Assembly (NCBI GenBank): GCA_002269645.1 | Contig: NIVC01000440.1 | Span: 186,001-250,000, forward strand | Direction: 5' to 3' | Source of the DNA: Macrostomum lignano | Taxonomy: Eukaryota | Length of the DNA: 64,000 bases | Shown: one piece after another, positions 49,301 through 62,893 of the stretch | Position numbering within the stretch: position 1 is the stretch's first letter | Layout: each line of letters starts with the position of its first letter | Notes under the pieces: model-generated | What the model saw: only the letters and a program-made list of their open reading frames with translations | What the model was told of the DNA's origin: nothing | Database searches by the model: none | Position numbers and translations under genes: made by a program

Positions 49301-51413
49301 AAAATCCCAATTCTCTAATCTAAAATCGCAGTTCTCCAATCTGAAATCCGAATTCCTTAACCTGAAATCGCAATTCTCCAATCTGAAATCCCAATTCCAT
49401 AATCTGAAATCCCAGTTCCCCAATCTAAAATCCCTATTCTCTAATCTAAAATCGCAATTCTCCAATCTGAAATCCCAATTCCCTAATCTGAAATCCCAAT
49501 TCAACCATTTTAAATCTATTTTCCAACCTGAAATCCCAATTTCTAAATCTGAAATCCCAATTCTCTAAGCTAGAATCCCAAATTCTCCAACCTGAAATCC
49601 CAATTCCCCAATCTGAAATCCTAATTCCCCAGTCTGAAATCCCGATTCCACATATTGAATCCTCAACCCTCCCACTTGAAATCCCGACTCCCCAAATTGA
49701 AATCCCAATCCCACAATCCGAAATTCGAAGTCCCAGTTACCAGTTCAGTCTCGCCATCCTTATCCGTGCCGAGCTCCATCGGCCACAGCTTGATCTGTCT
49801 GTCCGCCCCGGCCGTGGCGACCAGCGCCTCCTCCGGGTCGAAGCTGATAGCGGACCAGACCGCCGCCTCGTGGCCGCCAGCGAACACGGCCACGCAGCGG
49901 TTGCGACGCCACAGTCGAGCGGTTCGGTCCCAGCTGGCGCTGAGCAGCTGGCGGCCGCTGGATCCGTGCGGGCCGGCGCAGCTCAGGCCGCAGACGTTCG
50001 CTTCGTGACCTTCGAGACGAGCGACTGGCTCGGGCGAGTCCAGGGTGAAGGCGAATATTACCTGGTTGAGAGGGGGGCATTTGGCGATAGGATACAATGG
50101 GATTTTATCCAAAAAGTTATCAAGAAAGGGATAGAAAGTTATATATATATATTGAGAATAAGAGGACTTTATGGGGAAATATGAAGGGGAGAATAGGGAT
50201 TCATGGGGAACATGGTGGGAAGTAGCGGGATTCATGGGGAATATGGTGGGGAGAATGGGGATTTATGGGGAAATATGATGGGGAGAATGGGGATTTATGG
50301 GAAATATGATGGGGAGAATGGGGATTCATGGGGAATATGGTGGGGAGAAGGGGATTCATGGGGAAATATGATGGGGAGAATGGGGATTCATGGGGAATAT
50401 GGTGGGGAGAAGGGGGAATTCATGGGGAATATGGTGGGGAGAATGGGGATTTATGGGGAAATATGATGGGGAGAATGGGGATTCATGGGGAATATGGTGG
50501 GGAGAATGGGGATTTATGGGGAAATATGATGGGGAGAATGGGGATTCATGGGGAATATGGTGGGGAGAATGGGGATTCATGGGGAATATGGTGGGGAGAA
50601 TGGGGATTTATGGGGAAATATGATGGGGAGAATGGGGATTCATGGGGAATATGGTGGGGAGAATGGGGATTTATGGGGAAATATGGTGGGGAGAATGGGG
50701 ATTTACGGGGAAATATGGTGGGGAGAATGGGGATTTATGGGGAAATATGGTGGGGAGAATGGGGATTTATGGGGAAATATGATGGGGAGACTGGGGATTC
50801 ATGGGGAATATGATGGGGAGAATGGGGATTTATGGGGAAATATGATGGGGAGAATGGGGATTCATGGGGAATATGGTGGGGAGAATGGGGATTCATGGGG
50901 AAATATGGTGGGAGAATGGGGATTTATGGGGAAATATGATGGGGAGAATGGGGATTCATGGGGAATATGATGGGGAGAATGGGGATTTATGGGGAAATAT
51001 GATGGGGAGAATGGGGATTCATGGGAAAAAATAATAATAAGGAATTAAGAATGCGACGAAAACACAGGGAATAATGAGTAGTACTCTCCCATCTCCCAGC
51101 TACCCACCTTGTCCATTCCAGCGGTGTACAGCAGGCCACCAGGGCACCAGTCGCACGGGTCCATCCAAGCAACGGCATTCACGTAGCCGGCATGCGAGCA
51201 CAGGCCCAGGCACTCCGTGTAACCAACCGCTCCATCTTCAGCAGCCAGATCCGGACTCCAAACTCGAGCTGTTCGATCGCGACTGGCGCTGGCGATACAG
51301 GCAGCCCCAGACAGGGCAGGGGAGGTCACCGAGCACAGGGCTTTCACGTCTTTCTCGTGGCCTAGAAGGCTGCAGCTCAATCTGTAGGGTCGGAACGTGC
51401 TGGCCGATGCCAT
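43315..51413 (-). CDS. PLAA: Phospholipase A2-activating protein (Doa1/Ufd3), join(51413..51108,50061..49741,49014..48634,47990..47758,46615..46133,44923..44443,43620..43315), 836 aa
   Basis: WD40 propeller ([57 protein letters not shown]); PFU domain ([39 protein letters not shown]); PUL repeats; all junctions GT-AG, phase-consistent, 2511 nt. Confidence 0.95.
43660..44400. repeat. 20-bp then 24-bp minisatellites rich in TGA(C/G)TCA, last PLAA intron
   Basis: TGACTGAATGACTCAGTGAA and TGACTGAATGACTCAAACAGTGCA units. Confidence 0.93.
45108..46050. repeat. 31-33-bp minisatellite in a PLAA intron
   Basis: CCCATCCCATATCCCACACCAATTAGAGAAT. Confidence 0.93.
46690..47650. repeat. G-rich ~24-26-bp minisatellite in a PLAA intron
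   Basis: GGGGGCGATTCTCAGGGTGGATTG variants. Confidence 0.9.
49070..49720. repeat. 21-bp minisatellite in a PLAA intron
   Basis: CTGAAATCCCAATTCCCTAAT. Confidence 0.9.
50165..51025. repeat. ~31-bp G-rich minisatellite in PLAA intron 1
   Basis: GGGGAGAATGGGGATTCATGGGGAATATGGT variants. Confidence 0.9.
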
Positions 51414-51519
51414 GGGTACTTCTGTCTGGGATTGGCTTGGTGCTTGGATTGTCCTGGCTTTGCCTTGGCAACCGCGGCTTTCAGCTGCAGTGGAAAAAAT
51501 AATCTTGTATTAGAATTTT

Positions 51520-52320
51520 TTGGGAGATCTGGTCGCTGGGGTGAGGTCTGGTAGCTGGGGTGAGATCTAGTAGCTTCAGGTGGGATCTGGTAGCTGGGGT
51601 GAGGTCTGGTAGCTTTAGGTGAGATCTGGTAGCTGGAGTGAGGTCTGGTAGCTTTAGGTGAGATCTGGTAGCTGGGGTAAGATCTGGTAGCTGGGGTGGG
51701 ATCTGGTAGCTGGGGTGAGGTCTGGTAGCTGGGGTGAGATCTGGTAGCTGGGGTGGGATCTGGTAGCTGGGGTGAGGTCTGGTAGCTTTAGGTGAGATCT
51801 GGTAGCTGGGGTGAGGTCTGGTAGCTTTAGGTGAGATCTGGTAGCTGGGGTAAGATCTGGTAGCTTCAAGTGGGATCTGGTAGCTTGAAGTGAGAATCTG
51901 GTAGCTTAGATGAGATCTGGTAGTTGGGGTGAGGTCTGGTAGCTTTAGGTGAGATCTGGTAGCTGGGGTGAGATCTGGTAGCTTGGGTGAGATCTTCTGG
52001 TAGCTTGGGTGAGATCTGGTAGCTGGGGTAAGATCTGGTAGCTTCAAGTGGGATCTGGTAGCTTGAAGTGAGAATCTGGTAGCTTAGATGAGATCTGGTA
52101 GTTGGGGTGAGGTCTGGTAGCTTTAGGTGAGATCTGGTAGCTGGGGTGAGATCTGGTAGCTTGGGTGAGATCTTCTGGTAGCTTGGGTGAGATCTGGTAG
52201 CTTGAAGTGAGAATTTGGTAGCTGGGGTGAGATCTGGTAGCTGGGGTGAGATCTGGTAGCTGGGGTGAGATCTGGTAGCTTGGGTGAGATCTGGTAGCTT
52301 GGGTGAGATCTGGTAGCTTG
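51520..52320. repeat. ~19-20-bp minisatellite between the F-box locus and PLAA
   Basis: GAGATCTGGTAGCTGGGGT variants. Confidence 0.9.
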
Positions 52321-52701
52321 AGCCTATAATCTGGCATACAAAATGACAGGATAAAAATGAATTTAAATAGAGAGAAACAGCAACAATTATTAATATATGA
52401 ATATATTAGTTTAACAGTTTCAATTTAAATATTAGGGCAGTAAATAAAAAGGAGTAAAAAATTAAGCATCCGAACTACACGCAAATGTGACAGATTTATT
52501 TATGATTGAAAGCAAAATCAGAAAAATCTTTCTCTTTGAAGCCGATACTTAATTATATCACGAATATGCCAATGATCAATGGCTACTTAAGGCAATAAGT
52601 AGTTAAAAAATAGATTTGGAAATATAACAGAACTGTGTAATTAAATCAGGTTTAAAAACTGAGTGCTTTCTTTTATTTGTATCTTTCACATTATTGGAGA
52701 T

Positions 52702-54116
52702 TCACAAAAACATTACTTTAACAGGTCTGGAAGCTCTTTGAATAAAGCACGGCTTGTTAAACTTGCACTTCTTCAAGTGCTTTGACTGCCAGGCTCCCGG
52801 GGGCAGGCGCCCTGGAAGGAAATGGTTCGAAATAGGGATATTAGTGTTATAATTGTTATTTAATAAGAGTATATTTCCTTACCCTCACCTGTCTCTCTAC
52901 CCTCACCTGTCTCTCTACCCTCACCTGTCTCTACCCTCACCTGTCTCTCTACCCTCACCTGTCTCTCTACCCTCACCTGTCTCTCTACCCTCACCTGTCT
53001 CTCTACCCTCACCTGTCTCTCTAACCTCACCTGTCTCTACCCTCACCTGTCTCTCTACCCTCACCTGTCTCTACCCTCACCTGTCTCTCTACCCTCACCC
53101 GTCTCTCTACCCTCACCTGTCTCTCTACCCTCACCCGTCTCTCTACCCTCACCTGTCTCTCTACCCTCACCTGTCTCTCTACCCTCACCTGTCTCTACCC
53201 TCACCGGTCTCTCTACCCTCACCTGTCTTTACCCTCACCCGTCTCTCTACCCTCACCTGTCTCTCTAACCTCACCTGTCTCTACCCTCACCCGTCTCTCT
53301 ACCCTCACCTGTCTCTACCCTCACCTGTCTCTCTACCCTCACCTGTCTCTCTACCCTCACCTGTCTCTCTACCCTCACCCGTCTCTCTACCCTCACCTGT
53401 CTCTCTACCCTCACCCGTCTCTCTACCCTCACCTGTCTCTCTACCCTCACCCGTCTCTCTACCCTCACCTGTCTCTCTACCCTCACCTGTCTCTCTACCC
53501 TCACCTGTCTCTCTACCCTCACCTGTCTCTACCCTCACCTGTCTCTCTACCCTCACCTGTCTTTACCCTCACCCGTCTCTCTACCCTCACCTGTCTCTCT
53601 AACCTCACCTGTCTCTACCCTCACCCGTTTCTCTACCCTCACCTGTCTCTACCCTCACCTGTCTCTCTACCCTCACCTGTCTCTCTACCCTCACCTGTCT
53701 CTAACCTCACCTGTCTCTCTACCCTCACCTGTCTCTCTACCCTCACCCGTCTCTCTACCCTCACCCGTCTCTCTACCCTCACCTGTCTCTCTACCCTCAC
53801 CTGTCTCTCTACCCTCACCTGTCTCTCTACCTGGCCTACTTTCACCGGCATTTGTATCTTCTTCAATAAATATTGAATAAGCATTAAAATTGACTTGCTC
53901 ATTCACACCTTTGCTTTCATCAGTGCTCTCGCTGACGCAATTCTCGTTGCCATAGCAACCAGCAGAGTCAACAGTGACTAGGCCATCGTTGCCAGCACAA
54001 TAATCGGCATATCTGGCCCCGCAGCCAAGGTAGGCCAAAGGACAAGCATTCTCTGCCTCCATCAGTCCAAGGTCAGTAACCTGCTGGGCATGCCAACAGC
54101 ACAAAAATGCTATTTG
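52702..54116 (-). CDS. Diverged F-box-less duplicate of the 3' part of the FBXO30/40-like gene, join(54116..53909,52811..52702); alternative 3' module or pseudogene
   Basis: WHAQQ...CPLAYLGC matches WHAAQH...CPLAYLGC; LPPGAWQSKHLKKCKFN..RPVKV matches [22 protein letters not shown]; phase-1 donor/acceptor match, TGA at 52702, AATAAA (- strand) at 52672-52677. Confidence 0.6.
52870..53830. repeat. 16/18-bp minisatellite reading CAGGTGAGGGTAGAGAGA on the - (sense) strand
   Basis: Direct reading, ~50 units. Confidence 0.95.
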
Positions 54117-54827
54117 CTATTTGAATGATAATTTATTGTACGCTTGAATAAACAACTGTCACGCCAATTATACAACGCTACAGTTGCAGTCTTTGTACAC
54201 GCGTGCATTTAGGCTCAGGAATAGGGGATAGCTAGAGAGGATAGGGAGAGGAAAGAGGGAGAGAGTAGACAAGGAGACAGGGCGAGAAGTAGACAAGAAG
54301 AGTAGACAGGGAGAGAGTAGATATGGCGAGAGTAGACAGGGAGAGAGTAGATATGGCGAGAGTAGATATGGCGAGAGTAGACAGGGAGAGTAGAGAGGGA
54401 GAGAAGTAGACAGCAAGAGTAGACAAGGAGAGAGTAGAGTAGAGAGGGAGAGAGTAGACACGGAGAGAGTAGAGTAGAGAGGGGAGAGTAGACAGAGAGA
54501 GTAAACAGAGAGAGAGTAGACACGAAAAAAAGTAGCCTGGGAGAAATATTGGACAGTGAAGATAGTAGGTAAATGGAAGAGGTAGACCGGTAGGTAACAG
54601 ACAAACGAGCTGGCTAAGAAAAGAGATCAGGAAGTGAAAAACTCTATCAGCGCATATAACGGTAAATGGGTTTAAAAACGCAAACGATAAGCATGCAACA
54701 TGAGGCTCTGATCTGAGGCTTACAGTTAGCTTAAATCTCCACAAAATACTTTACAAGCCCAGCAAAGAGGAAAAATGGTAACTAAGGAGGAAACCAAAAG
54801 CAGACAGAAACTCCATTACATTACAGC

Positions 54828-55210
54828 CCTTCATTCAGCACTACTGTCTCCCTTCATTCAGCACTACTGTCTCCCTTCATTCAGCACTACTGTCTCCCTT
54901 CATTCAGCACCAATGTCTCCCTTCATTCAGCACCAATGTCTCCCTTCATTCAGCACTGCTGTCTCATTTCATTTAGCACTACAGCCCCCTCACTCAGCAC
55001 AGGCAGCACTGCTATCCCCCTCACTCAGCACAGGCAGCACTGCTATCCCCCTCACTCAGCACAGGCAGCACTGCCATCCCCCTCACTCAGCACAGGCAGC
55101 ACTGCCATCCCCCTCACTCAGCACAGGCAGCACTGCCATCCCCCTCACTCAGCACAGGCAGCACTGCCATCCCCCTCACTCAGCACAGGCAGCACTGCTA
55201 TCCCCCTTCA
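54828..55210. repeat. 23-bp and 31-bp minisatellites; the 31-bp unit overlaps the last codons and stop of the F-box gene
   Basis: CAGCACAGGCAGCACTGCCATCCCCCTCACT. Confidence 0.9.
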
Positions 55211-55746
55211 GCGGAGGCAGCACTCGCACTCGCACAGGAGCGGTTTGAGTCTCGGATCGCTGGTTGAACTCGCAGCTGGCCAGATGCTTCGACATCCAAG
55301 CGGCAGCTGGCAGACCCCCTGGCCGGTGATGGTCGAATGCGGCTTGGCCGGAGGCGAACCAGCGGGCTCTGCTTGGTTTGGACACCTGCCGCCAACCGGT
55401 GATACCGGTGGGGCTCTGGTTAGCCAGCAGCTCCCAGCCAAGTTCAACGCAACAGCTTCGGCCGCGGCGCCAACGATCGTCATCAAGACGGTGGCGCATC
55501 GCCCGGCAAGTTGAGCGAAGGCACAACAGGGCGTGGCTGTCCAGGTAGGACAGAATGCGATCGATCAGCTCGTCTGGTAGGGTCATGAGGCCTGGGCCTG
55601 GGTGGAAGTTGATAGGCGCAGAGATAGCTGTGTCTCACTTTGCCACCGGCCTGCATGCTGCCTGCCTGCCTGCCTGCCTGCCTGTCTGTCTGCCTGCCTG
55701 TCTTAGTGTCTGTCTGCCTGTCTGTCTGCCTGTCTGTCTGCCTGTC

Positions 55747-55782
<36 letters not shown>

Positions 55783-55817
55783 GCCTGTCTGTCTGTCTGT
55801 CTGTCTGTCTGTCTGCC

Positions 55818-55854
<37 letters not shown>

Positions 55855-56100
55855 GCCTGTCTGTCTGTCTGTCTGTCTGTCTATCTGCCTGTCTGTCTGT
55901 CTGTCTGTCTGCCTGTCTGTCTGTCTGCCTGTCTTAGTGTCTTAGTGTCTGTCTGCCTGTCGTCTGTCTGTCTGTCTGTCTGTCTGCCTGTCTGTCTGTC
56001 TGTCTGTCTGCCTGTCTGTCTGTCTGCCTGTCTGTCTGTCTGTCTGTCTGTCTGCCTGTCTGTCTGTCTGCCTGTCTGTCTGTCTGTCTGTTGCCTGTCA

Positions 56101-56135
<35 letters not shown>

Positions 56136-56165
56136 GCCTGTCGTCTGTCTGTCTGTTGCCTGTCA

Positions 56166-56200
<35 letters not shown>

Positions 56201-56207
56201 GCCTGTC

Positions 56208-56251
<44 letters not shown>

Positions 56252-56329
56252 TAGTGTCTTAGTGTCTGTCTGCCTGTCGTCTGTCTGTCTGTCTGTCTGT
56301 CTGCCTGTCTGTCTGTCTGTTGCCTGTCA

Positions 56330-56364
<35 letters not shown>

Positions 56365-56413
56365 GCCTGTCTGTCTGTCTGTTGCCTGTCATCTGTCTGT
56401 CTGTCTGCCTGTC

Positions 56414-56449
<36 letters not shown>

Positions 56450-58308
56450 GCCTGTCTTAGTGTCTGTCTGTCTATGTATGTCTGTCTGGATACATATCCC
56501 AATCAATCGCCCCGAAATCGTCTCCAACCCGTACCCCACTCACTACAGTAGCCATCATCATCGCTAGAATCGTCTCCAACACCGCTAGCCTTCTCATCGC
56601 CAAGACAACCAACAGAGGTATCTCGGCGAGCGAAAGCGTGCCCGAACAGATCGAACACGAGGCCTTTATCGCCTGTGAAGCGGGCGGTGCAGCCCAGGTA
56701 GGCCAGCGGACAGACTGTCTCAGCCGCGAGGGTGTCGCTGCCGGACAAGTTGGGATACAGGCGGAGGTGCTGCGCCGCGTGCCAAGAGAATTCGTCGCGA
56801 CGAACAACCTGTGCGGCAGAGAGCGGAGGAGATTAGAATAACCGCATTACTAATGGTTACCTTAAAAAGATGATAAAGATCTTTTGATAAACTTTATAAA
56901 ACACATCAACTAAAGATAATAAAAGGATTGACTTAGTAACAAAGTACAGAATCCTGCAGATTCTTGAGTACGGACACCTGTAAGATACTTGAGTACAGAC
57001 ACCTGTAAGATACTTGAGTACAGACACCTGTAAGATACATGAGTACAGACACCTGTAAGATACTTGAGTACAGACACCTGTAAGATACTTGAGTAAAGAC
57101 ACCTGTAAGATACTAGAGTACAGACACCTGTAAGATACTTGAGTACAGACACCTGTAAGATACTTGAGTACAGACACCTGTAAGATACTTGAGTACAGAC
57201 ACCTGTAAGATACTAGAGTACAGACACCTGTAAGATACATGAGTACAGACACCTGTAAGATACTTGAGTACAGACACCTGTAAGATACTTGAGTACAGAC
57301 ACCTGTAAGATACTTGGGTACAGACACCTGTAAGATACTTGAGTACAGACACCTGTAAGATACATGAGTACAGACACCTGTAAGATACTAGAGTACAGAC
57401 ACCTGTAAGATACTTGAGTACAGACACCTGTAAGATACTTGAGTACAGACACCTGTAAGATACTTGAGTACAGACACCTGTAAGATACTAGAGTAGACAC
57501 CTGTAAGATACTTGAGTACAGACCCCTGTAAGATACTTAAGCAGACAGCACAGAACCCGCAGCTCACCTGAGAGCACACCCGAGCACCGCGCGGACGCCA
57601 ATCGTGAGCCCTCGGACAGCCGTCGCCAGGATTAACAAACGCCAAGTGATGATTGACAAGCTGCGGCAGCGGAGGCTGGTGTTGATGAAGATTTGGCGAC
57701 TCGGCAAGGCAGCTCAGAATCCGAGCGGACAGGCCGCTGCTTGGCAGTCGATGAGGCTGCTCGGCCGATTTCTCCCCAGCCTCTTCTTTATCATCATCAC
57801 GATCGCCGAGTCCTTGACTACGGTAGCCTAGCAACTGGTCTAGCGGCTCACTGCCAGCCCGATGACCTTCTCCATAATTGTTGTTATTAGCAACAGACTT
57901 GGCAGACTTACTGTTACTGTAATTATTATTACTAGACGCCGGCCGACGCTCTTTAAGCATCAGCGACAGGCAGAGGGCGCTGTCGAAATTCGATCGACAA
58001 AATCCGTCCCCATCCGGACAGGCGACGCTCATGGATGACGTCACGAACTCCGGGAACAGCATCAGCGGGCACTGGACAATGGAGGCCGGACAGACAGGCA
58101 GGTGACTGGCCAACTGCTGACGAGGCAATCGCCTGTCGCAACCGTAAGCAACATTGATGCAGGGGACCAGCTGCCTGGGACAAATCAACAGGTGATCCGG
58201 CCGTTTGCAGGCGTGGAAACAGGCACCGCAGTCGCAGTGAATCATGTCGCAGCCGAGGTCGCAGCTGCGCCTGTGACAGCGGCAGCAATGATTGGCGCAG
58301 ATGTTGTC
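55176..58308 (-). CDS. FBXO30: FBXO30/FBXO40-like F-box protein with N-terminal TRAF-type zinc finger, join(58308..57568,56808..56544,55597..55176), ~475 aa without initiator Met
   Basis: [10 protein letters not shown]...[31 protein letters not shown]...[12 protein letters not shown]; RRDEFSWH...CPLAYLGC; F-box [17 protein letters not shown]; C-terminal HLASCEFN. Phases 0 and 1 match. Cannot separate FBXO30 from FBXO40; no genomic ATG seen at the 5' end. Confidence 0.88.
55665..56480. repeat. (CTGT)n degenerate microsatellite in an F-box gene intron
   Basis: Direct reading. Confidence 0.95.
56965..57540. repeat. 25-bp minisatellite in F-box gene intron 1
   Basis: GAGTACAGACACCTGTAAGATACTT; sense strand reads ...TCTTACAG|GTGTCT... 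Confidence 0.95.

Positions 58309-59077: not shown

Positions 59078-62893
<3,816 letters not shown>

What the first reader, a model, noticed from the sequence alone, without database searches (positions are those of the whole stretch)
52672..54137. F-box-less duplicate 3' module: possible decoy isoform of the FBXO30/40-like E3 adaptor
Seen: downstream of the F-box exon are two diverged exons repeating the CPLAYLGC segment (54116-53909) and the SKHL..C.FN tail (52811-52702). They splice in phase (G|GTGTGA to TTCCAG|GG), end in TGA with AATAAA about 25 nt later, and omit the F-box. Their acceptors (54116 or 54080) are phase 0, as is the donor of zinc-finger exon 1 (57568). A separate AATAAA at 54132-54137 could end the F-box isoform. 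Known: the F-box binds SKP1. Inference: alternative last-exon choice could give a protein with the zinc finger and tail but no SCF link, a built-in competitor. The frame is open despite heavy divergence, which suggests selection.
Basis: partly seen in the sequence, partly recalled or inferred. Interest (0 to 1): 0.72.

Follow-up and report, generated by a model that had tools for sequence, protein, structure and literature searches.

The report
F-box-less partial duplicate beside flatworm F-box gene
Just downstream of a Macrostomum lignano FBXO30/40-like ubiquitin-ligase adaptor gene lies an old, partial copy of its 3' half that has lost the F-box yet still reads as an intact, conserved two-exon coding unit; whether it is made as an alternative ending of the gene, as its own small trans-spliced gene, or not at all is unproven.

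Summary
The window is Macrostomum lignano, identical to Mlig_3_7 contig NIVC01000440.1. The minus-strand gene has zf-TRAF_2, F-box and F-box_4 domains.

Two diverged exons lie downstream: dupA (54080-53909) and dupB (52811-52702). They repeat the CPLAYLGC block and the SKHL..C.FN tail, splice in phase 1 like exons 2 and 3, end in TGA followed by AATAAA, and carry no F-box remnant in any frame.

The copy is old:
- 44% amino-acid identity to the parent.
- Third codon positions are 56% different.
- All homology blocks stay in one frame.
- Profiles built from other phyla still recognise both exons.

A diverged second copy in the genome (L001) keeps the ORF, all splice sites and the AATAAA. It has fewer substitutions in the exons than in the flanks and only one indel, which is in frame. 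Neutral decay is therefore unlikely, though omega of about 0.5 is not significant.

The "alternative last exon / decoy" reading has no direct support. No annotated or predicted protein joins exon 1 to dupA. In this organism the geometry fits a separate SL-trans-spliced downstream cistron at least as well. Function is untested. Interest is modest.

The parts
57568..58308 (-). Canonical exon 1. It encodes the TRAF-like zinc finger (zf-TRAF_2) plus a low-complexity linker. The acceptor is TATTTTCAG| at 58310-58309, with no genomic ATG upstream of the finger. The donor CAG|GTGAGC is phase 0.
   Evidence: PF15965, E = 5.7e-18. The GenBank proteins of all three copies are 5'-partial and start 0-4 codons after this acceptor.
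56544..56808 (-). Canonical exon 2, encoding [10 protein letters not shown]...CPLAYLGC. The donor A|GTGAGT is phase 1.
   Evidence: tblastn to P0001 gives 97.8% identity. Family HMM A scores it at 35.3 bits.
55180..55597 (-). Canonical exon 3, encoding the F-box and the F-box_4 tail (..[14 protein letters not shown]..). The stop TGA is at 55182-55180.
   Evidence: (PF12937, PF15966, PF00646).
54132..54137 (-). AATAAA. This is the first poly(A) signal after the canonical stop and lies about 1 kb downstream of it, in a 3' UTR that is mostly minisatellite. It sits 51 nt upstream of the dupA acceptor and is conserved in L001.
54081..54116 (-). Degenerate 5' remnant of the exon-2-like copy, reading ..AFLCCWHAQQ in the same frame as dupA. 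It is GU/T-rich and ends in the acceptor AG at 54082-54081. It differs from L001 at 1 of 35 aligned bases. A TAG at 54119-54117 closes the frame upstream in this copy.
53909..54080 (-). dupA, the diverged copy of the 3' two-thirds of exon 2 (CPLAYLGC block). It has a phase-0 acceptor, a phase-1 donor G|GTGTGA, and an internal ATG at 54062-54060.
   Evidence: Family HMM A scores it at 15.3 bits. The syntenic copy is at L001:14216-14366, with a 21-nt in-frame deletion.
52812..53908 (-). Intron of the duplicate module. It is almost entirely an 18-nt minisatellite (52880-53831, about 54 copies). No F-box-coding remnant is present.
52702..52811 (-). dupB, the copy of the last roughly 35 codons of exon 3 (SKHLKKCKFNK tail). 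It has a phase-1 acceptor TTCCAG|GG and a stop TGA at 52704-52702. Homology to the parent (NHFLPG versus DHHRPG) starts only 6 codons upstream of the acceptor.
   Evidence: Family HMM B scores it at 12.9 bits. The syntenic copy is at L001:15962-16068.
52672..52677 (-). AATAAA, 25 nt after the dupB stop. It is conserved in L001.
51411..51484 (-). Start of the next gene on the same strand, a WD40 protein of about 860 aa. The acceptor is CACTGCAG| and the annotated gene begins 2 nt after it. The ATG is at 51413-51411.

Best explanation
An ancient partial tandem duplication copied the 3' half of this FBXO30/40-like gene (an exon-2-like and an exon-3-like segment) to a site just behind the gene. 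The F-box-coding part and the RRDEF..H block were later lost. What remains is a two-exon, 93-codon reading frame that keeps only the CPLAYLGC block and the SKHL..C.FN tail.

That frame has been kept open and spliceable by purifying selection for most or all of its history (shown by comparison).

How it is expressed is inferred only. I favour a separate small downstream cistron. The polymerase would read through the canonical poly(A) site. The orphan acceptor at 54081|54080, 51 nt past that AATAAA, would receive the spliced leader, whose terminal ATG is in frame. The product would be a protein of about 94 aa (87 aa if the internal ATG at 54062 is used).

Such a protein cannot bind SKP1 through an F-box. 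It could still bind whatever the C-terminal Cys/His motif pair binds. A regulatory or competitor role is possible but untested.
For: **Identity and synteny.**
- The organism and gene are identified.
- Three genomic copies exist: L003 (identical to the window), L002 and L001. All carry the module in the same position.

**Deep-time constraint.**
- Over 99 aligned codons, 44 amino acids are identical to the parent.
- Differences at codon positions 1, 2 and 3 are 0.38, 0.37 and 0.56.
- All homology blocks stay in one frame despite several indels.
- The donor phase is inherited from exon 2.
- Simulation gives P(ORF intact) below 1e-3 once neutral divergence reaches 0.25 substitutions per site.
- HMMs from other phyla recognise both exons.
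- Among positions aligned in both copies, 15 match the family consensus in both. A further 4 match only in the duplicate and 3 only in the canonical copy.

**Recent constraint, window versus L001.**
- Exons have 11 substitutions in 261 nt and one 21-nt in-frame deletion.
- Flanks have 31 in 362 nt (BLAST alignment, Fisher p = 0.035) or 58 in 424 nt (MAFFT alignment, p = 4e-5), plus 6 indels, five of them not multiples of 3.
- AG, GT, AG, the ATG and the AATAAA are all kept.

**Expression route.**
- The M. lignano spliced leader ends in ATG. About 30% of genes are trans-spliced and 15% lie in operons, with a modal intercistronic distance of about 100 bp after repeats are removed (PMC8629364).
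- The canonical gene itself appears to take its ATG from the leader.
- The next gene's annotated start is 2 nt after an acceptor.
- The only poly(A) signal of the canonical gene lies 51 nt before the dupA acceptor.
Against: - There is no transcript, junction read, SL read or peptide evidence of any kind.
- The transcript-based GenBank annotation has no gene here. This is weak evidence, because that pipeline dropped non-coding transcripts, minor isoforms and repeat-overlapping transcripts (PMC5730564). The usual 100-aa ORF minimum of the ORF caller is my own knowledge.
- The dupA acceptor (CAGCAG|) fits the reported trans-splice motif [T/C]TNCAG at only 5 of 6 positions.
- Between the two copies the changes are 7 non-synonymous to 4 synonymous. 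Omega is about 0.49 and is not significantly below 1 (p = 0.20).
- L001 has deleted the conserved GNDGLVTV block and moved the stop one codon earlier.
- Synonymous divergence (0.07) is below flank divergence. Part of the conservation may therefore be at the nucleotide level, for example the downstream element of the poly(A) site.
- Pfam does not recognise the product.
- The AlphaFold single-sequence model is uninformative (pLDDT 39).
Confidence: 0.45

Rival explanations
1. dupA and dupB are alternative terminal exons of the same gene. The exon 1 donor (57568) skips exons 2 and 3 and the first poly(A) site and joins dupA. The result is a protein of about 341 aa with the N-terminal TRAF-like finger and the duplicated tail but no F-box, which could compete with the SCF-bound form.
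For: - The phases fit: the exon 1 donor and the dupA acceptor are both phase 0, and dupA and dupB are both phase 1.
- Each terminal module has its own AATAAA.
- Tandem duplication of terminal exons is a known route to alternative 3' ends (own knowledge).
- The constraint evidence is the same as for the best explanation.
Against: - No protein with the exon 1-dupA junction exists among the hits to the full canonical query, which shares all of exon 1.
- The splice would have to skip two good acceptors and a poly(A) site 51 nt upstream of its target.
- The ancestral exon-2-type acceptor and the RRDEF..H block have decayed. A TAG at 54119 closes the frame upstream, and the 54116 acceptor is not conserved in phase in L001.
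- Phase match alone is a 1-in-3 chance.
Confidence: 0.2
2. A non-functional relic. The module would be a decaying partial duplicate sitting in the 3' UTR or intercistronic DNA. It may be transcribed passively, with its open frame surviving by luck or because it died only recently. Its sequence conservation would come from non-coding roles, such as the poly(A) downstream element or splicing and processing signals for the read-through transcript to the WD40 gene.
For: - It is not annotated in the transcript-based GenBank annotation.
- It has lost two of the four conserved blocks of the parent half, RRDEF..H and the F-box.
- Omega is not significantly below 1, and dS is below flank divergence.
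- A conserved block is deleted in L001.
- There is no Pfam hit, and the AlphaFold model has low confidence.
Against: - The joint probability that neither copy acquired a stop or a frame-breaking indel at the flank divergence is about 0.02.
- Over the much longer time since the duplication that probability is effectively zero, yet all blocks remain in frame and family-consensus residues are kept as well as in the parent.
- A strong new acceptor sits exactly at the homology boundary of dupB, in the one phase that restores the tail's frame.
- Exon GC is about 50%, against 28-42% in the flanks.
Confidence: 0.3
3. A C-terminal extension isoform. An internal donor near the end of exon 3 (..APVR|GTGCGA, after 55230) would splice to dupA. 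The protein would keep the F-box and carry a second [12 protein letters not shown] module, as in UniRef model A0A1I8IGE3.
For: Two UniRef gene models made on another assembly of the species (P0008 and P0002) use the 54080 acceptor after exon 3, and P0008 also uses the 53909-to-52811 junction. The internal donor is phase 0.
Against: - The underlying assembly carries indel errors. P0008 frameshifts inside dupB, and P0002 runs on into the WD40 gene.
- GTGCGA is a poor match to the reported donor consensus GT[G/A]AG (PMC8629364).
- The transcript-based annotation ends the protein at the normal stop in two of three copies; the third is frameshifted.
Confidence: 0.05

Closest known systems
FBXO30/FBXO40-type F-box proteins (Pfam zf-TRAF_2 PF15965 plus F-box_4 PF15966)
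   Same: - The parent gene has both domains.
- It has more than 130 homologues at E <= 1e-10 across animals, with the same block order: RRDE..H..H, CPLA..GC, F-box, HL..C.FN.
- The duplicate keeps the CPLA..GC and HL..C.FN blocks.
   Different: The duplicate module has no F-box and no RRDE..H..H block. On its own it also has no N-terminal TRAF-like finger. Pfam does not detect it.
Alternative terminal exons created by tandem exon duplication
   Same: The homologous exon pairs (exon 2/dupA and exon 3/dupB) lie in tandem, have the same splice phases, and each set has its own poly(A) signal.
   Different: No junction evidence exists. The duplicated acceptor has moved and the first poly(A) signal sits immediately before it. 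That layout is more typical of an intercistronic region than of a regulated alternative-exon choice.
Downstream cistrons of SL-trans-spliced operons in M. lignano (PMC8629364, PMC5730564)
   Same: - The module is in the same orientation as its neighbours.
- An acceptor lies 51 nt after the upstream gene's AATAAA.
- The neighbouring genes start at acceptors.
- The leader's terminal ATG would be in frame.
   Different: No SL reads were examined. The acceptor matches the trans-splice motif at only 5 of 6 positions. The ORF is unusually short.
MicroProteins and dominant-negative F-box-deleted constructs (own knowledge: small paralogue-derived proteins that keep only an interaction domain; F-box-deleted beta-TrCP and similar constructs trap substrates)
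   Same: A truncated derivative of a multi-domain protein that keeps a putative interaction motif and lacks the effector-coupling domain.
   Different: There is no evidence here that the retained motifs bind substrate, that the product exists, or that it competes.
Unprocessed partial-duplicate pseudogenes
   Same: It is a truncated tandem copy lacking 5' exons and a promoter of its own.
   Different: It has no stop or frameshift in three genomic copies, its splice signals are retained, and its substitution and indel rates are lower than in its flanks.

Membership tests
FBXO30/40-type F-box protein (parent gene) | N-terminal TRAF-like zinc finger (PF15965) | tested here: met
   E = 5.7e-18, 65.7 bits against a cutoff of 27, in exon 1.
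FBXO30/40-type F-box protein (parent gene) | C-terminal F-box with the F-box_4 extension (PF15966) | tested here: met
   PF15966 at 32.3 bits (cutoff 32), PF12937 at 32.9 bits, PF00646 at 27.5 bits, in exon 3.
FBXO30/40-type F-box protein (dupA+dupB product) | F-box | tested here: not met
   No Pfam hit. The family HMM finds no F-box remnant in any frame between 55180 and 52400.
FBXO30/40-type F-box protein (dupA+dupB product) | Family-conserved CPLA..GC block and HL..C.FN tail | tested here: met
   Custom HMMs from non-Macrostomum homologues score 15.3 and 12.9 bits. Consensus residues are retained.
Alternative last-exon isoform of the parent gene | Transcripts joining the exon 1 donor to the dupA acceptor | not testable with these tools
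   No read data are available. No such protein appears in the sequence collections.
Alternative last-exon isoform of the parent gene | Compatible splice phases and separate poly(A) signals | tested here: met
SL-trans-spliced downstream cistron (operon member) | Same orientation and a short repeat-corrected distance from the upstream gene's poly(A) signal to an acceptor | tested here: met
   The distance from AATAAA to the AG is 51 nt. The criteria come from PMC8629364.
SL-trans-spliced downstream cistron (operon member) | Acceptor motif [T/C]TNCAG and SL-containing reads at the acceptor | tested here: inconclusive
   The motif matches at 5 of 6 positions (CAGCAG|). SL reads could not be tested.
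Protein-coding sequence under purifying selection | Open frame, in-frame indels only, and fewer substitutions than the flanks across independent copies | tested here: met
   The result rests on only one informative comparison (window versus L001).
Protein-coding sequence under purifying selection | dN/dS significantly below 1 | tested here: inconclusive
   Omega is about 0.49 from 7 non-synonymous and 4 synonymous changes, p = 0.20.
Unprocessed pseudogene | Disabling mutations (stops, frameshifts, lost splice sites) | tested here: not met
   None in the window/L003, L002 or L001. In L001 the stop moves one codon earlier.

The most novel reading that the evidence does not exclude
An SCF substrate adaptor and an F-box-less mini-paralogue derived from it are co-transcribed from one promoter as successive cistrons of a flatworm operon. 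The mini-protein would be a closed version of a TRAF-type CCHC finger that is split by the F-box insertion in the parent. It would compete for the adaptor's partner, giving a stoichiometrically coupled built-in antagonist.
Probability: 0.12. Interest if true: 0.6.

Novelty: new member of a known kind. Interest (0 to 1): 0.3.

Why it matters
If the module is expressed, it would be a natural F-box-deleted derivative of an E3 adaptor. That is the kind of construct researchers build artificially as a dominant negative. Here it would sit next to, and probably be co-transcribed with, its parent in a tractable flatworm that supports RNAi and transgenesis.

It would also be a small ORF of about 94 aa that standard pipelines miss because of the 100-aa cut-off.

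If it is not expressed, it is an ordinary partial duplicate. Either way the locus shows that the current annotations of this gene are incomplete. The start codon seems to come from the spliced leader, and the UniRef models are fused or truncated.

Tried and rejected
- **Tail search.** A search of the 93-aa dupA+dupB product against 5.8 billion proteins found one word-sharing candidate and nothing at E <= 10. This has little power, because no read-derived proteins of this gene appear in the collection either.
- **Pfam.** No hit for the product, even at E <= 10.
- **PDB sequence search.** The canonical C-terminal half finds nothing.
- **AlphaFold.** The single-sequence model of the product has pLDDT 39 and is uninformative, so it was not taken to fold search.
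- **Literature.** Gene identifiers and FBXO30/40 were not found in the M. lignano papers or their supplements.
- **Rejected idea: dupA and dupB are 5' exons of the downstream WD40 gene.** dupB ends in a conserved stop plus AATAAA, and the WD40 gene has its own acceptor and ATG. The P0002 fusion needs a frame change.
- **Rejected idea: recent gene conversion or a recent copy.** Third codon positions are 56% different.
Full report
**Observation**

On the minus strand the window carries a three-exon gene:
- Exon 1 is 58308-57568.
- Exon 2 is 56808-56544.
- Exon 3 is 55597-55180, with the stop at 55182-55180.

- dupA (54080-53909, or from 54116) contains ..[15 protein letters not shown]...
- dupB (52811-52702) contains ..AWQSKHLKKCKFNK.. 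and ends in TGA.
- AATAAA follows the TGA by 25 nt (52677-52672).
- The dupA donor (G|GTGTGA) and the dupB acceptor (TTCCAG|GG) are phase 1, like the exon 2/exon 3 junction.
- The exon 1 donor and both candidate dupA acceptors are phase 0.
- AATAAA at 54137-54132 is the only canonical or ATTAAA signal between the canonical stop and dupA.

Every coordinate in the finding checks out. The similarity is beyond chance:
- tblastn gives E = 4.6e-5 for dupA and 7e-6 for dupB within the window.
- Profile HMMs that I built from homologues of other phyla score dupA at 15.3 bits and dupB at 12.9 bits. All other frame pieces of 55180-52400 score about zero.
- No F-box remnant appears in any frame.

**Organism and gene**

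- The canonical protein is 98% identical to M. lignano PAA69239.1 (BOX15_Mlig018569g1).
- It carries zf-TRAF_2, F-box-like and F-box_4 domains. That domain pair defines FBXO30/40-type proteins (own knowledge).
- There are 361 homologues at E <= 1e-3, from many animals.
  - L003 is identical to the window in the tested segments.
  - L002 is 99.5-100% identical.
  - L001 is a diverged copy.
- All three show the same gene order: DPCD on the opposite strand, then the F-box gene, then the duplicate module, then a WD40 gene of about 860 aa.

**Anatomy of the duplicate**

- Homology to exon 2 begins upstream of the 54080 acceptor. ..CCWHAQQ.. corresponds to ..FSWHAAQH.. in the same frame. It continues through [13 protein letters not shown] and S.GC.G.E to a donor at the homologous position and phase.
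- The RRDEF block is unrecognisable, and in this copy a TAG (54119-54117) closes the frame upstream.
- Homology to exon 3 begins only 6 codons before the dupB acceptor (NHFLPG versus DHHRPG). The acceptor AG lies in the CCAGGG that is also present in the parent.
- The roughly 95 codons encoding the F-box are gone. The intron between dupA and dupB is almost entirely an 18-nt minisatellite.
- The module is therefore a 5'- and internally truncated copy of the 3' half of the gene. It retains two short family-conserved Cys/His blocks.

**Is it maintained by selection? Deep time**

- Over 99 aligned codons, 44 amino acids are identical. Differences at codon positions 1, 2 and 3 are 0.38, 0.37 and 0.56.
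- The duplication is therefore old, at roughly 1 substitution per site at third positions.
- All blocks remain in one frame across several indels.
- Simulated neutral evolution of the 93 codons leaves an intact frame with probability 0.02 at d = 0.137, 0.001 at d = 0.25, and about 0 at d = 0.5. The indel rate was taken from the flanks.
- At positions aligned to the family profile in both copies, 15 match the consensus in both. Another 4 match only in the duplicate and 3 only in the parent. An example is HLKKCKFNK against the consensus HLKKCPFNK, where the parent has HLASCEFNQ.

**Is it maintained by selection? Recent time (window versus L001)**

- Exons have 11 substitutions in 261 nt and one 21-nt in-frame deletion.
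- Non-repeat flanks have 31 in 362 nt by BLAST alignment (p = 0.035) or 58 in 424 nt by MAFFT alignment (p = 4e-5).
- The flanks also have six indels, of 8, 5, 3, 10, 1 and 4 nt.
- Both acceptors, the donor, the internal ATG and the AATAAA are retained.
- In L001 the junction codon changes (Gly to Glu), HLKKC becomes HLEKC, and the stop moves one codon earlier.

**Caveats on the constraint evidence**

- There is only one informative pairwise comparison.
- Omega is about 0.49 from 7 non-synonymous and 4 synonymous changes, and is not significant (p = 0.20).
- Synonymous divergence (0.07) is lower than flank divergence.
- Divergence is heterogeneous along the locus. The canonical gene is 0.7-2.9% diverged including its introns, while this region is 4-13% diverged.
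- L001 has deleted the conserved GNDGLVTV block.

I conclude that long-term coding constraint is well supported. Present-day constraint is likely but not proven.

**How would it be expressed?**

No tool here gives transcript data.

Arguments against leaning on annotation:
- The GenBank annotation is transcript-based. It was filtered for coding potential, dominant isoforms (isoform-frac 0.75) and repeat overlap (PMC5730564). A 94-aa ORF or a minor isoform would therefore be dropped.
- Two UniRef models made on another assembly of the species do use the 54080 acceptor, and one also uses the 53909|52811 junction. They attach the exons after exon 3. They also contain frameshifts or run into the WD40 gene. 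This shows only that gene predictors see these exons.

Relevant biology, from PMC8629364:
- The modal intercistronic distance is about 100 bp after repeats are subtracted.
- The 35-nt leader ends in ATG.
- An acceptor without an upstream cis donor is sufficient for trans-splicing.

The canonical gene itself seems to use this mechanism.
- All three GenBank proteins are 5'-partial and begin 0-4 codons after the TATTTTCAG| acceptor at 58308.
- No genomic ATG precedes the zinc finger.
- M+DNICANHCC aligns with homologues such as MDHTHCDNC.
- The WD40 gene's annotated start is 2 nt after an acceptor.

In a read-through transcript, the exon 1 and exon 2 donors are consumed by their own acceptors. 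The dupA acceptor, 51 nt past the AATAAA, is then an orphan acceptor. With the leader's ATG in phase 0, it would give M-VTDLGLMEAEN... Both fit the phases and neither is shown.

**What might the product do?**

- The product lacks the F-box, so an SKP1 link through that domain is excluded.
- The two retained blocks look like the two halves of one TRAF-type CCHC finger (C-x6-C ... H-x3-C). Compare exon 1's CINVAYGC-x11-HLPVC.
- When the F-box insert is removed in silico from the family consensus, the joined sequence gives sub-threshold hits:
  - zf-TRAF_2: E = 1.7e-4, 22.5 bits against a cutoff of 27.
  - zf-TRAF: E = 0.047.
  - Sina_ZnF: E = 0.09.
- The M. lignano sequences themselves give no such hit.
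- This is a lead, not a result. It would explain why exactly these two blocks were co-retained, and it suggests a small zinc-binding interaction module. A competitor ("decoy") role is conceivable but entirely inferred.

**Comparison and novelty**

- The parent is a member of the FBXO30/40-type family.
- The module fails the family's defining F-box test. It is best described as a truncated paralogue, a partial tandem duplicate.
- Partial duplicates, duplicated terminal exons, operon cistrons and dominant-negative truncated paralogues are all known kinds.
- What is new here is only this instance, which is unannotated in GenBank.

Interest is modest (0.3). It would rise if transcripts and a competitor function were shown.

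Noticed in passing
window 58310-58296 (minus strand); L003:9986-10003: The canonical F-box gene has no genomic start codon. All three GenBank proteins are 5'-partial and start at or just after the TATTTTCAG| acceptor. The M. lignano spliced leader ends in ATG (PMC8629364), so the initiator Met is probably donated by trans-splicing. The UniRef models instead start at an internal Met inside the zinc finger.
   Followed up: partly
window 60003-62804 (+ strand), with broken frames at 59100-60003: An intact 933-aa ORF encodes reverse transcriptase plus RNase H, from a non-LTR-type retroelement. It lies antisense, just upstream of the F-box gene. The spacing between DPCD and the F-box gene is 6.5 kb in L003 and the window, but 2.3 kb in L001 and 3.2 kb in L002, so the insertion seems specific to this copy.
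   Followed up: partly
window 58560-58440, about 59100-59040, about 62930-62890: Degenerate (CCCTAA)-like, telomere-repeat-like tracts flank the retroelement region.
   Followed up: no
L002, at the equivalents of window 55435 and 55255: The L002 copy of canonical exon 3 has two 1-nt deletions. As a result the GenBank protein PAA63329.1 (P0004) is frameshifted through the end of the F-box_4 domain and its SKHL tail. This is either an assembly error or a decaying gene copy. The duplicate module in L002 is intact.
   Followed up: partly
window 51524-52320, 52880-53831, 54275-54522, 54827-55207, 55658-56488, 56943-57538: Every intron, the 3' UTR and the intergenic spacers of this locus are filled with long tandem arrays. 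The unit lengths are 19, 18, 15, 23/31, 4 (GACA) and 25 nt. Array lengths differ between the genomic copies.
   Followed up: partly
window 58560-55180 versus 54840-52590, compared with L001: Divergence between the two copies is very uneven. It is 0.7-2.9% across the canonical gene including its introns, but 4-13% from the 3' UTR through the duplicate module. This may reflect gene conversion over the canonical gene or a local difference in mutation rate.
   Followed up: no
Family-wide (P0009-P0072); window exons 2 and 3: In FBXO30/40-type proteins the CPLA..GC block and the C-terminal HL..C.FN block resemble the two halves of one TRAF-type CCHC zinc finger, with the F-box domain inserted in its loop. 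Removing the insert in silico from the family consensus gives sub-threshold zf-TRAF_2 and zf-TRAF hits.
   Followed up: partly
UniRef A0A1I8FDM1 (P0002) and A0A1I8IGE3 (P0008): The public UniRef models of this locus are chimeric or frameshifted. P0002 fuses the F-box gene, dupA, dupB (in the wrong frame) and the downstream WD40 gene into a single 789-aa protein.
   Followed up: yes
P0010 (604 aa, representative library): A homologue from another organism contains two complete CPLA..GC, F-box and HL..C modules in tandem within one protein. Duplication of this module has therefore happened elsewhere, in that case without loss of the F-box.
   Followed up: no
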